Below, one piece after another: positions 383-6,300 of a stretch of 64,000 nt of DNA. Both the position numbers and the translations under genes were made by a program. Origin of the DNA: Bugula neritina (taxonomy: Eukaryota; Animalia; Bryozoa); assembly GCA_964035545.1 (NCBI GenBank), contig OZ037765.1, forward strand, positions 23,187,504 through 23,251,503. Reading direction: 5' to 3'. Every line of letters starts with the position of its first letter. Positions within the stretch are counted from its first letter, which is position 1. The notes under the pieces are model-generated. The model did not search any database. It worked only from the letters and a program-made list of their open reading frames with translations, and had not been told where the DNA came from.

Positions 383-3300
383 CCCAGTTGCATCAGGCAG
401 CTTTACATCATCCCCTGAACGTTGACATAAATGGTGGAAAATATTCTACAATATTACATTGCATTATTTTATACTAAACACCATTAAAACATCTAATAGA
501 AACAGCAAGCATAATACATAATTAGCAAAACAAATTAGCAACAGTAACACACTGTCACAATATAGTACAGAATCTCACCTCATGCAGGGCAGTGTACTGC
601 ACATGGTACGGGGCTACTTTCTCCTCCCCCTTGATGGCTACATTGATGTGTAGTCTAATAGCACCAGACACGGCTGACTTATCCGTTCTTTTCTCTAAAA
701 GAGGTAGAAGTGTCACTGTGACAGAAAGGGCTGTTGGATTACACAGTTACGGAATGCAGGTACTAATTTAGGTGTTGTTGTTACATCAGTGATGGAACTA
801 ATCAGATAGCGAGTGATCATGTTGATATTGTGTACGCCATACTAGATCCAGAAACTTAGACTTGAATCAACAGTCTATAGTTAAAAAAGATCGAGGGGAA
901 TCAGGATAGCCAGGTTCTACATTATATATTGGAGGGGAGAGGGAATGTATTTCATAAAAGTATTTGGTAACGAGAGAATATATATATATATGTTATATTA
1001 TGGAATAGAAAAGCAGTACATTTAAAAGCTGACATGTAATTTGAAATATCATGTTTATCATGCCAGCCGAACTGTGCAATCACGTTGAAATAAACTGTGC
1101 ATTATACAAATATATTATGCATGAACCAAAAAACAATAATGATAAAAATATAAAGCCTTGTTAAATAATTAAAACAGCAAGGCAAGTTTAAAAAGTGTTA
1201 AAATATTTAAACGCCTATTGCCAAGAGACAGGAATTAGTAGAGCCAATAAAATTTTCTATTAACCTGAACTGCTGGAATAATATTAGAGCCTAAGTTATA
1301 ATAAACTGGATAAAATTGATTTAAAGTACGTTATTTGTAGATTAAACTAAATTGAAAAAATGTGTAATTAAAACAATTCCAATTGAGGAGTAATGTATTA
1401 AAATGTTATTCAATCAATGATAGACATGTAAGTTTCTGCTGCTAATTTTCTATGTCCACATGTAGTTAGCATATAAGCTACACAGCTAGTAGCCAAGTCG
1501 GGTGATAACAGTGCTGAAAACAGTTTTTGTTTCAAACACTGAAAATATTTATTGAAAAATAGAAATTATCTGAGACATGCGTATTTATAATTAATTTGAT
1601 AGGCTTATACGTGGACTACTATAGAGAATTTACAATATCTTATGGTTGAGGAGAATTGTTAGGGAATCATCAAGGTGGGAATTTTCTTGTGACAAAGCAA
1701 CTACATGAGGAATTTTCGACATAATGATTCTTTTGCTAAATTTGCAAATTATTGCAACAAAGATACATTCAGAATTTTGTTTTTATTTCATTTTGTAGCA
1801 CAACATAGGCCTGTTTTCTACATCTAAGAATATTCTCTTCAGGTTAGTACAAGAAGCTACAGCCATGCCTATGATATTTTGGATTTAGCTGTAAAAACAT
1901 CTATTTGGAAATTATTCAGCATTTGGCAGGAATTGATAAGTTTACTAGAAATAGGTTGGTTTGTAAGCTAATGTAAAGTAATGGATACAACAGAGGCATA
2001 GAGATTGCATGTCATTACGTGATACCTAGGTTATACCAAACGTCCATATCACCATTGAGAGTTCGGACTTCAATGATCGTTTGACCAAGGAAATCGTCAC
2101 TTTCATGTGAGGTGAAAGTTGAACGTAGCTTTGATTGTAGATCATTATCTTCATCCCTAAACAAAACACAATCAGCTCAATTATTCAACAGTTATACAAA
2201 ATACTGGCAGCAAAAATAGCAGGCAGTAATATGTGTGCATATCAAAAACACTTTTTGTTAAAATATTTAATATAACGAAAGTCCAAAGAGAAAATAATCA
2301 CGCTCTAACCAATAGCAGGAAAAATGTTCAAAGTGTTCGGTTTTGAATTTTTGTAATGTTTGTAATAATACGAAAATTCAGTTTTTCTTTTTAGTTTTGG
2401 ATATGCACAGATAGTACTGAATACTGTTTCTGCAGAAGCCACCATGACTGGCTGGCCGAGTGACCTACCTAGATTATACCACACATCCATCTCACCAGAC
2501 AAAGTTCGAACTTCAATTATAGTCTGGCCAAGAAAATCATCTGACTCTGGGGTAAATTTTTTGCGAAATTTTGATTTGAAGTCGTCGTCCTCATCCCTGT
2601 AGTATACAGCTTTCAACAACATGGCATACACAAAGCTATAGCCAGCCCGGTTTATTGTAAAAGAACTTTAACTACACCTAGCATGACTATCAGTCATCAT
2701 GAAACTACAATGTAAGTGCCACAAGGTCAGTACATTCCATTACACATGAACAACTTGAAACTTACCAAACTCGAACTTTGATTCTATCAGAAAAGTTGTG
2801 GCATTCACTAAAAGAGAAATAGAAAACATATGATTATATTTATTTAAATAAGATCCAAAGTCTGAGACACTGCACACTACAAAAATAAGAAGTATTACAT
2901 AAAAGAAGTCATCAAAATTAATCTACAAAATAGTTATAATCAACCTACAATGTAAATGATTGATCCCAAACAGGGTTGAGCTCCTTGGGCACTGTTTTAG
3001 TCTGCTTTTTCGTTTTGCCGACTTGTACAGTAACATATGGGTCACTAGTGCCTGTTTTGTCTTTTCCTATTAAACCTTGGGCTCTCAATACTACAATTAT
3101 TAGCAACAGAATATGCAGGTACAGAATGCTACTATGAGACACATGATTGTACATAATGCACTCATTACAAAAGTATGCTAAGTCTGTGCAAGACAAACCC
3201 AAATTATTCAGATCTTTCTTTTTACAGACACTAATTCAGAAAGGAGATGCTGAATAAGAAAAGTCTGAGATCATAGACCATTTATTAACCATAGCAAACT

Positions 3301-6300
3301 GTGATTAAGTGGAACTGTGCTGCCGAAGCATTGACCACCACAGTCTAGTGACTACTACGTGTCATACTTTGGAAGAGTCAGCAATCTGTTTCTAGCATTC
3401 TATGCAAATTGAATAAAATATTATTATATGACAGCTCAGAATATGCCACCCGAAAGATATCCAAAACCCATGAACTGTGCACAATTACATGATAGTGCGA
3501 TATAGCATGTTTTTCTCCCATTGATAAAATTCTATAGCCAGCGACCATTTTGTTAGAACAGGCACTGGCTATAAATAATTACTCTCCATTCATTTCATTT
3601 GAGAGTTTTACTTACACACAGAGGTTTTTCTTTTTGTGGATAACCACGCTTGCTTTACTTTCAGAAATAACAAAATATTAACATGCAATATTATATAGAA
3701 GATGACACAACTAAGCTGTGAGAAACAAGTTAATTATGTAACAAAATTTTAATTATTTAGCAAAGCAATTTCCGCTCTTGACACTTTTGGTAAAGGTAAA
3801 AGTTTTTCTGGCTCAACATATAGTTATGGAACTATCAAAGCCTGTTTGTCATGTGGAATAAAAGCAAAATTGCTTTTTAAAAAGTTGTTACGTAAATAAT
3901 AATGTCAATCAATAAGAGAATATTTTGTGGTAGAGCTTTTGAATTAAGCTTGAAACATAATTTATTTTATTTTTCAACATGCTTTCCAAACCTATTGTTA
4001 TATCGCACATGAATTATGTTTTTCAATTATATAGAATTTAAAATTGAAAATTAAAAAATCTTTAAACATAGAACGAATTGATGTAGAGCCAGTAATCAGC
4101 TACAAACTTGCTGTAAAAAGTAGTTCTATTGCTGACTTTATATTCACCTGTAATGTTGAGTCTAGCCGACCAGTTCGATGTACCAGCAATGATGCCCTCT
4201 TTGACATGTCTCAAAGATGCTGCGTGCAGCTCATTGTCTATTTTGAAAACATTTCTAAAAATCAAATAAGTAATACTTTAAATTAATTCTGACAGCTACT
4301 TTTACAGACACACTAAGCATATTAAACATAATAGTCAACAGCTGAAATATTTATCCGTTCATATAGATACAACTCTATAACTGGCAGCCATTTGTTGCTG
4401 ACAGTCCGCTGCTGATCACGTGGTCACACTGCAAACACATCAACCTAACTTACTTGATCATGTCAAAGATCTCGGGCTTACTCTTTTCTCGAGTTTCCAT
4501 TCGACCTTCAATTGCCTTCTTTTTAGCCTGAGCTTTATCCTCGGAACCTCTCTTAGCGTTCTGCTCAGCGGCTTCTGTAAACAGCACCGTGTCTCTTTTG
4601 AAGGTACTTTAAATACTTTGCAAGATACAAACATATAAACCAAAAACTGGTGCTTTGATAAGCTAATAAGGAAGTTATACCATACAGCCTTCAATCAACT
4701 CCTCAAATTCTTAAAGGTTGGAACAAACTTGGCAAGAATTGACCAGAAATGAGTGAAAATAAACAAAATGAACACATTTATTGGTTTCTAATGAATTAGT
4801 ATCAGTTTGACTGCAGCCTGTTCTGTTGGAGTGTTTGTTTATTGAGTTCTACTACTTCATCATTTCCATCTACCATACTTACCTCTTCTTATGTGAGAAA
4901 TGAGTTTGTTTCTCTTCTAATAAATTGACTACTCACTGTTGCACGACTAGCAAGCTATTTTACCATTTGTAGTATTGTACATGTTCACAACACCCTCTCG
5001 ATTTGCTGGCAGTTGAGAATGGCAATTTAAATTTTTCAATACAGATGCTAATAGCACTAGTAGAAAGTTTTACTATTAAACAGTAATGTATTGTTTGTCA
5101 TTTGGTGAGTTCTTGTTCTACCTCTTTGCTATATAAACTGCTCAGCCCAGATAGATTGACTTGAGACCTAACAGAGTTCCAGCAGTCTGACCAGCTCAGA
5201 TCAACAGACATCACCTGGTTCCATGTTTTGAACTGGCTGCAGTCAAACTGAGAATTAAGATCTTTACACGGGTAGACCAGTGTACAAGAGAAAATGAAGC
5301 ATCTAACCAGCTATTTAATCCAACTAAAATAACTTTTCACTTAACTCACTATTAACTAAATATTAACTAGCTACTAGATCTATTAACTATTGACTAGGTA
5401 CTAGATCTATTAACTATTGACTAGGTACTAGATCTATTTACTATTGACTAGGTACTAGATCTATTTACTATTGACTAGATGCTAGTCCACTAACTATTAA
5501 TTGGGTACTAGATTTACTATTAACTAACTACCCAGTCTATTACTAGCTGGTGACTCAACTTGCAACTACTTACGTTGTAGACAGTCGGCATTTAACAAAT
5601 CTTTGCATTTTTCATGACATTTCACACCACATTCTGAGCAGCGCAGACCTTGCTTGGCAACACCCCACAACAAGCCTCCGCACTCAAAGCAATAGGTTGG
5701 CCCGGTTGCTGACCAGGAGTGAAAGTTATGTGGTGTGGTACTAGAGATTGGATATATGGTTGCCTCCAGGGCCTTCTTGTACACATGCATTTTCTAAAAT
5801 TCAAATTAAAAATCAAATTTTGAAACTGAATTAATTTCTTAAATAGGCTACAAAAAGACCATATCAAAATGCAACTTGCACAAGTATCAGTAAGATACAC
5901 TAATCAAAACTTATATAATAGACTACCCATAAAATATTTTATCTTTAGAATACTTACCAAATCTTCATCATTTAACGATTGTCGAACACCAAAGGCTGAT
6001 TGCATACCGCTCTTTTTATTATTGTGTATTGTCTGGAAAATACAACTATAGCATTTAAATAGCTTATCACAACAGCAGCTTGGTCCATTCTCCCACCCCA
6101 AAGAAATAAATTTTGCAAACAAACGAAAAATTAAGAAAATACTAATCTGGCATTTTGAATCAGTCACTACGTACCACACAATGTTGACTATGACTGATAT
6201 ACTAACTTTACTAAACTAGTCAAACATGCTGGCCCTAACACTCAGCAGTGTATTTCACAGTCTGCAACACCTTATATTATTGTGCTCTCGTGATAAAGAT

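What the first reader, a model, noticed from the sequence alone, without database searches (positions are those of the whole stretch)
2026..2596. Duplicated, mutually exclusive exons swap the Ca2+/phospholipid-binding loop of the UNC13 C2B domain
Seen: two paralogous exons (2469-2596 and 2026-2156) lie between the same flanking exons. Both have intact splice sites, open frames and phase 2 to 1. At 128 and 131 nt, including both or neither shifts the frame, so only one can be used. The strand [20 protein letters not shown] is kept at the protein level despite many synonymous changes, which implies selection on both copies. The loop differs: [20 protein letters not shown] (five K/R) versus [21 protein letters not shown] (two K/R, one extra residue). 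Established: this segment of Munc13 C2B carries Ca2+-coordinating aspartates and the basic amphipathic loop-3 helix implicated in PIP/PIP2 binding and release control. Inference: a splice switch that tunes membrane affinity and release probability. I do not recall such an exon pair in vertebrate, fly or worm UNC13, but I could not search.
Basis: partly seen in the sequence, partly recalled or inferred. Interest (0 to 1): 0.88.

Follow-up and report, generated by a model that had tools for sequence, protein, structure and literature searches.

The report
Duplicated switchable exon in bryozoan UNC13
In moss animals (bryozoans), the gene for the core neurotransmitter-release protein UNC13 carries two alternative copies of the exon for its calcium- and membrane-sensing loop, both conserved across species, which points to an undescribed splice switch, although spliced RNA was seen for only one copy.

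Summary
The window is Bugula neritina chromosome 1. Exon A (2596-2469) and exon B (2156-2026) are tandem copies of the UNC13 C2B loop-3 exon. Either alone keeps the frame; both or neither gives a premature stop. The same pair, in the same order with the same lengths and splice sites, occurs in five other bryozoan-type lineages, and B alone on a short contig of a sixth. B is under strong purifying selection (36 of 44 variable columns at third codon positions) and always has the weaker donor. RNA contigs from three studies show only E>A>D junctions; B appears only unspliced at low depth, so its splicing is inferred, not seen. New here: the A-B intron holds a 21-41-pair stem in five lineages with unrelated sequences, leaving 64-92 unpaired nt. 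Both copies keep the loop's aspartates; B puts Ser/Thr at positions 768-772, including the R769 site needed for priming in rat. Other invertebrate loci carry further tandem pairs of this exon. No paper on such UNC13 exons was found; C2-domain switch exons are known in synaptotagmin-1. Verdict: a new member of a known kind.

The parts
5574..5793 (-). UNC13 C1-domain exon
   Evidence: Pfam C1_1 E 5e-14; boundaries
4454..4574 (-). C1-C2B linker exon 1
   Evidence: tblastn, AG/GT ends
4148..4254 (-). C1-C2B linker exon 2 (107 nt, single copy here)
   Evidence: loose ends at 3092 in RNA contigs match its end
2949..3090 (-). exon F, first half of C2B (loop 1, polybasic strand)
   Evidence: Pfam C2 E 2e-14; joint to E in RNA contigs
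2766..2807 (-). exon E, constitutive exon upstream of the pair
   Evidence: joints F>E and E>A
2469..2596 (-). exon A: C2B loop-3 exon, default copy, donor with G at +5
   Evidence: E>A joint in 3 RNA runs, A>D joint in 2; PDB match
2394..2433 (-). 5' arm of the long stem in the A-B intron
   Evidence: 39 of 40 columns identical in L014, the one change keeping a G-U pair
2210..2249 (-). 3' arm of the long stem in the A-B intron
   Evidence: outer part identical in L014, changes only at the loop-side end
2026..2156 (-). exon B: duplicated loop-3 exon with one extra codon and a weak donor; splicing inferred
   Evidence: conserved in 7 lineages; PDB match; no junction seen
1985..1998 (-). short intronic motif just downstream of the B donor, candidate splicing-factor site
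   Evidence: similar motif at the same place in L007, L021 and L005; no pairing partner above shuffles
1548..1553 (-). AATAAA near where unspliced RNA contigs end; possible intronic poly(A) signal, not conserved beyond Bugula
579..694 (-). exon D, constitutive exon downstream of the pair (last C2B strand)
   Evidence: A>D and D>next joints; single copy
383..445 (-). next constitutive exon; the gene continues into the MUN domain beyond position 1

Best explanation
A and B are mutually exclusive internal exons from a tandem duplication that predates the split of the bryozoan lineages sampled. SHOWN: either copy alone gives an open frame; both or neither gives a premature stop; A is the form spliced in whole-animal RNA; B's peptide, length and splice sites are conserved; the intron between them can fold into one long stem in most lineages. 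INFERRED: B is a minor exon, switched on in some cells or stages through its weak donor and a nearby intronic motif. Joining A to B is discouraged by the stem, which brings A's donor near B's branch point, and leftover A+B or skip-both mRNA is removed by nonsense-mediated decay. INFERRED function: both forms keep the loop's aspartates, but B replaces the basic end of the loop-3 helix with Ser/Thr plus a His. That should weaken calcium-independent membrane binding and lower basal vesicle priming, making release more dependent on calcium and DAG. Confidence: about 0.8 that B is a functional internal exon, about 0.45 that the stem enforces exclusivity, about 0.5 for the stated direction of the functional effect.
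For: Same A-then-B pair at 128/131 nt in L007, L008, the L021 group, L036 and L102, and B alone on the short contig L005. Between lineages B has dN 0.01-0.05 against dS 0.5 to saturated; variable columns by codon position are 5/3/36. B copies form one side of a branch, support 86/95, not starred. Donor GT and +3 A are kept in 7 of 7 B copies, while read-through tails are unrelated. G at +5 is in 6 of 6 A donors and 0 of 7 B donors. Stem with 9-35 nt 5' flank and 48-58 nt 3' flank in 5 lineages; that geometry arose in 1-3 of 60 shuffles and 1 of 78 genomic pieces; L102 was fetched after the idea was formed and fits. R769 maps into this loop, and R769E impairs calcium-independent binding and priming (PMC8648301). 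The loop-3 helix inserts into the bilayer (PMC8851502). Among 378 fetched peptides only B has the extra residue, and 372 have 4-6 K/R at 763-772.
Against: No E>B or B>D junction in any of the four runs laid; B lies only on unspliced contigs that continue about 350-400 nt past its donor. No spliced B protein was found, though no spliced bryozoan A was found either. L026 has lost the stem arm. Constitutive introns of about 70 and 88 nt exist in L008, so a collapsed length of 64-92 nt is not too short to splice. Collapsed donor-to-branch distances are 31-74 nt and straddle the 50-60 nt limit. L016 has four amino-acid changes in B, including D757. The charge difference vanishes in L036.
Confidence: 0.78

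Rival explanations
1. B is an alternative last exon, or part of one: RNA reads through the B donor and is cut at an intronic poly(A) site, giving a truncated C1-C2B protein or a dead-end transcript.
For: In three RNA runs B is continuous with the downstream intron, and the contigs end near an AATAAA present in both Bugula types. Read-through gives a stop within 3-23 codons in every lineage.
Against: AATAAA is absent from the B-D intron in four of the five other lineages checked. Donor GT-A is conserved while tails are not. The last C2B strand lies in exon D, so a product ending at B would be an incomplete domain, yet B's core strands are conserved. In X1 and X3 the unspliced contigs start in A, so B there is read as intron. 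This RNA may be real and coexist with true B splicing.
Confidence: 0.11
2. B is a decaying or silent duplicate, kept by chance or only as an RNA element.
For: No junction seen; B is degenerate in L016; L011 has an A-type exon and no B; dS is lower in B than in A.
Against: Changes fall almost wholly on third codon positions across lineages whose introns no longer align, which is a protein-level constraint. B is identical in the window and in L014, which align at about 88-89% over the locus.
Confidence: 0.06
3. Same splicing, different function: B is mainly a phosphorylation switch. It adds Ser/Thr next to basic residues in the membrane-facing helix, so a kinase could release C2B from the membrane.
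For: Five Ser/Thr at 763-772 in 7 of 7 B copies versus two in A, and this holds even where charge is equal.
Against: No phosphorylation data; kinase motif not tested. Compatible with the best explanation, differing only in the last step.
Confidence: 0.25
4. Assembly or haplotype artefact.
For: None.
Against: One contig of run X14 runs from exon F through A and B; independent assemblies of other species show the pair; flanking DNA is single-copy.
Confidence: 0.01

Closest known systems
Synaptotagmin-1, Syt34 and Esyt2 mutually exclusive C2-domain exons of invertebrates (PMC2823689; C. elegans snt-1 6A/6B, PMC4165533)
   Same: A duplicated exon recodes part of a C2 domain; arose repeatedly in invertebrates; copies can differ by a few codons; snt-1 exons are also 3n+2 with one rare form.
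   Different: Different gene family. Here it is the priming factor UNC13 and its loop-3 helix.
Munc13-1 / UNC-13 C2B loop 3 (PDB 6NYC, 5UE8, 7T7C; PMC8648301, PMC8851502, PMC11991699)
   Same: Same segment; the four aspartates of this exon are kept in both copies.
   Different: No paper found describing alternative exons here; unc-13 is not mentioned in the worm survey and UNC13A/B/C not in the text-held supplements of the human survey. UNC13 isoforms known to me differ mainly at the N-terminus (own knowledge).
Frameshift/NMD-backed mutually exclusive exon pairs (PMC5740500, PMC4165533)
   Same: Homologous neighbours, length not divisible by three, ends inside a folded domain, one common and one regulated copy.
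   Different: Junction validation for B is missing here.
Dscam exon 17: steric hindrance combined with RNA secondary structure (Yue et al. 2013, PMC3917985; title seen in reference lists, text not held)
   Same: Two-exon cluster where RNA structure and spacing are proposed to act together.
   Different: Could not be compared in detail. Here there is one stem between the exons, at the same place but with unrelated sequence in each lineage, and no docker/selector pair was found.

Membership tests
UNC13/Munc13-1 family | C1, C2B and MUN in order | tested here: met
   Pfam C1_1 and C2; PDB C2B match; downstream exons match a full-length UNC13 to its C-terminus
Mutually exclusive exons (criteria of PMC5740500) | Neighbouring internal exons, homologous, similar length, same frame, no stop | tested here: met
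Mutually exclusive exons (criteria of PMC5740500) | Junction that bridges the other exon, for A (A>D skipping B) | tested here: met
   joint 694-2469 in X1 and X4
Mutually exclusive exons (criteria of PMC5740500) | Junction that bridges the other exon, for B (E>B skipping A) and B>D | tested here: inconclusive
   Not seen, but only assembled contigs were available and these drop rare forms
Mutually exclusive exons (criteria of PMC5740500) | No A>B joint, or the joint shifts the frame | tested here: met
   no joint listed; A+B gives a stop
Mutually exclusive exons (criteria of PMC5740500) | Both copies conserved under purifying selection | tested here: met
Steric-hindrance exon pairs | Donor-to-branch-point distance under 50-60 nt in the linear intron | tested here: not met
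   A-B intron is 312 nt here and 159-320 nt in most relatives; only L036 is 78 nt
Steric-hindrance exon pairs | Effective distance under the limit once the stem is folded | tested here: inconclusive
   31-74 nt with guessed branch points; constitutive introns of about 70 and 88 nt exist
Docker/selector (competing structure) clusters | One conserved site pairing with alternative partners | tested here: not met
   conserved motif after B has no partner above shuffles; no competing arms in the inverted-repeat scan
U2/U12-incompatible pairs | U12-type intron on one side | tested here: not met
   all donors are ordinary GT(A/G) types
NMD-enforced pairs | Both-in or both-out mRNA accumulates when NMD is blocked | not testable with these tools
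   only the premature stops were shown

The most novel reading that the evidence does not exclude
The loop-3 exon of UNC13 C2B is a recurrent site of tandem duplication in invertebrates (up to four separate pair types among the loci fetched), giving splice-switched priming factors. Some copies change the membrane-binding helix (bryozoan B); others lose loop aspartates (L060/L075, L051/L089) and could be calcium-blind. In bryozoans exclusivity is kept by a length-compensating intron stem that is rebuilt from different sequence in each lineage.
Probability: 0.35. Interest if true: 0.8.

Novelty: new member of a known kind. Interest (0 to 1): 0.62.

Why it matters
UNC13 sets vesicle priming and short-term plasticity, and its C2B loop 3 was the same length in every other sequence sampled. 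Natural alternative versions of that loop, kept by selection, are ready-made variants for the open question of how calcium-independent and calcium-dependent membrane binding by C2B set release probability; each loop can be placed in rat or worm rescue constructs. It also suggests that isoform control of the release machinery is wider in non-model animals than vertebrates, flies and worms indicate. The intron stem gives a clean test of whether RNA folding alone can make two exons exclusive.

Tried and rejected
Assembly duplicate: rejected. Stem as a transposon foldback: the segment has no second copy in the genome, and that search skips very common words, so this is weak. Docker/selector pairing of the motif after B: not above shuffles. 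Plain steric block: linear intron too long, collapsed length not below the shortest introns. Homology of bryozoan A with the second exon of L013 because both end in T-P: the matching exon in L101 has Arg there, so Pro is probably convergent; the 126-column tree cannot settle it. Searches for spliced B proteins were blank but uninformative, since length limits exclude full-length proteins and no spliced bryozoan A was found either. Taxa of L013, L101, L060/L075, L051/L089 and L011 could not be named. Shin 2010, Michelassi 2017 and Yue 2013 were not held. Earlier scan notes: none. Joined chains were built only inside a script to locate stop codons. L076 and L093 are vertebrate-type loci returned; I did not take them for human. 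Both went through the batch exon scans, L076 served as one tree row, and neither was pursued.

Full report
SOURCE. The genome has 216,009,554 bases in 321 contigs and the window's contig is 35.64 Mb. This matches Bugula neritina tzBugNeri2.1: 216.00 Mb, 320 scaffolds plus mitochondrion, chromosome 1 of 35.64 Mb (PMC11480708). A locus 88% identical to the window comes from a sample labelled AY690838; that accession occurs in the paper on the B. neritina mitochondrial genome.

OBSERVATION. The gene on the minus strand is UNC13: a C1 exon, C2B exons, and further exons to the C-terminus beyond the window edge. Exon A (2596-2469, 128 nt) and exon B (2156-2026, 131 nt) lie between E (2807-2766) and D (694-579). 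Both have AG|G and AG|GT ends and match Munc13-1 C2B. The genome holds exactly these two copies and one D. With A or B the chain is open; A+B stops at the end of B; skipping both stops at the E-D junction.

RNA. Only assembled contigs were available, and their RNA status is the tool's guess. Three runs from three studies show F>E and E>A; two list A>D; D>next is in all three. No E>B, B>D or A>B joint is listed. B lies on low-depth contigs (about 110, 9 and 10, against about 540-680, 200 and 230 for A; contig depth is a crude measure) that are unspliced at the B donor and run to about 1620-1680; two of them begin in A. So A is the default form. Contigs drop rare forms, so B's splicing is neither shown nor excluded. 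An AATAAA lies just beyond these ends in both Bugula types, so some RNA may end in the intron.

COMPARISON. The top hits of the representative search were B orthologues from other samples. Fetching their contigs and scanning metagenome assemblies gave the A-then-B pair, always 128 and 131 nt, in L006/L007, L008-L010, the L016/L021/L023/L025/L026 group, L036/L038 and L102, and B on the short contig L005. I call these bryozoan-type because they share flanking-exon signatures with the window (L005 has no flanking exons and is placed by B alone) and one sample is labelled BRYA; species names were not available. Across seven lineages B varies at 36 third, 5 first and 3 second codon positions; dN is 0.01-0.05 where dS is 0.5 or more. 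B copies fall on one side of a branch, support 86/95, short of the tool's starred level. The introns no longer align between lineages apart from short motifs, yet B's acceptor, donor GT and +3 A persist, and the read-through tails are unrelated. This is what an internal coding exon predicts. L011/L028 have an A-type exon, and the complete L011 locus has no B; whether that is the ancestral state or a loss is open. In L016, B carries four amino-acid changes including the first Asp (contig coverage 6.5x).

HOW THE CHOICE MAY WORK. Frame alone makes the two exclusive at protein level (shown); decay of the bad products by NMD is inferred from known cases (PMC4165533, PMC5740500). All six A donors have G at +5 and none of seven B donors does, fitting a default A and a regulated B. 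Such a donor can work: linker exon 2 lacks +5 G too and is spliced in RNA. The A-B intron holds a long stem, arms 2433-2394 and 2249-2210. Against the second Bugula type the 5' arm is 39/40 identical, the change keeping a G-U pair, while the loop is 77% identical; the intron flanks are also well conserved, so this contrast is only partly specific. Stems of 21-41 pairs sit at the same place in L007, L008, L021 and L102 with unrelated sequences, ending 48-58 nt before B; L036 simply has a 78-nt intron. That geometry arose in 1-3 of 60 shuffles per lineage and 1 of 78 genomic pieces. The criterion was set after seeing the first lineages; L102 was an after-the-fact test and passed. The simplest reading is that longer introns are tolerated only if they fold back, keeping A's donor close to B's branch point. 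Against it: L026 lacks the 3' arm, introns of about 70 and 88 nt are spliced constitutively in L008, and collapsed distances to guessed branch points run from 31 to 74 nt, the window's being the longest. The stem is probably real; its role is unproven.

WHAT IT DOES TO THE PROTEIN. Taking the Lys at position 48 of the 6NYC chain as K720 (my assignment, consistent with K706 and R769 in PMC8648301), the exon starts at D757 and includes R769. D757, D759, D775 and D776 are kept in A and B, except in L016; that D757, D759 and D775/776 are the calcium ligands is from my own knowledge. The loop-3 helix inserts into the membrane without calcium (PMC8851502), and R769E impairs calcium-independent binding and priming without changing release probability (PMC8648301). 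Among 378 fetched peptides (redundant, not a species sample) position 769 is K or R in 352, and only B has the extra residue. B always has S768, T769, T771, S772 and an inserted His. A always keeps K768 but often has N, H or Q at 769, and has Pro at 772. K/R counts at 763-772 are 3-5 in A and 2-3 in B, equal in L036. I infer that B binds membranes less well at rest, lowering primed-pool size more than release probability; a phosphorylation switch is the main alternative.

WIDER PATTERN. The same 128-nt exon occurs in tandem, with intact splice sites, in three more pair types: L013 and L101, where the second copy has a conserved IDVTTL signature also seen on hundreds of contigs; L060/L075, where the second copy has Asn757 and His759; and L051/L089, where the first copy lacks D775. 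Order and sequence differ from the bryozoan pair, which suggests separate duplications, but the tree cannot prove it. Most other loci spanning E to D have one copy. Splicing of these extra copies was not tested.

KNOWN AND NEW. Four literature searches found no report of such exons in UNC13; most subscription journals are outside the library. The kind is known: mutually exclusive exons altering C2 domains arose several times in invertebrate Syt1, Syt34 and Esyt2 (PMC2823689), and worm snt-1 6A/6B is a validated 3n+2 pair with one rare copy. It works like those. As a member of the validated class it meets every criterion tested except the junction for B, which is inconclusive.

LIMITS. No raw reads were offered. 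Branch points are guesses.

VERDICT. Real, conserved and very probably a functional switch exon (0.78). New member of a known kind. Interest 0.62.

Noticed in passing
L017-L020, L033, L040, L042, L048, L087 (two copies), L039 (three); window orthologue 4254-4148 is single: The neighbouring 107-nt C1-C2B linker exon of UNC13 is itself tandemly duplicated in other animals, also phase 2 to 1. An NCBI scorpion isoform (P0094, Centruroides vittatus X4) uses the alternative type, so a second switch cluster in UNC13 is likely.
   Followed up: partly
L013:259-634; L101:10018-11590: A second lineage has a conserved tandem pair of the loop-3 exon; the second copy changes the strand after the loop and occurs on hundreds of contigs. 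Taxon not named.
   Followed up: partly
L060:958-1085, L075:2334-2461, L051:1108-1235, L089:2190-2317: Strongly diverged extra copies of the loop-3 exon with intact splice sites that have lost one or two loop aspartates; candidates for calcium-blind UNC13 forms.
   Followed up: partly
window 2765-2597 and 2468-1620: RNA contigs retain the introns on both sides of exon A, most in run X1, which lists no contig in the F-E or D-next intron; coverage stops near an intronic AATAAA. Slow splicing or intronic polyadenylation; unexplained.
   Followed up: partly
L016:1380-1510: B carries four amino-acid changes, including the first Asp, against near-identical relatives; decay in one lineage or assembly error.
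   Followed up: no
L026:5128-5297: The 3' arm of the A-B stem is replaced in this one sample while the 5' arm and both exons are intact.
   Followed up: no
window 4254-4148 and 2807-2766: Bugula's linker exon 2 is much more diverged from other bryozoan-type copies than neighbouring exons, and exon E has Phe where others have Ser.
   Followed up: no
window 5793-5574: The UNC13 C1 domain here belongs to a host that carries bryostatins, which bind C1 domains (own knowledge). Its ligand loops were not compared with non-producing bryozoans.
   Followed up: no
window 14106-12721, 21481-20822, 20203-19775, 26707-26438: Long open frames upstream on the minus strand, probably N-terminal UNC13 exons including a C2A-like one and possibly alternative starts; not modelled.
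   Followed up: no
window 5357-5513: A 27-nt tandem repeat of about six copies in the intron after the C1 exon.
   Followed up: no
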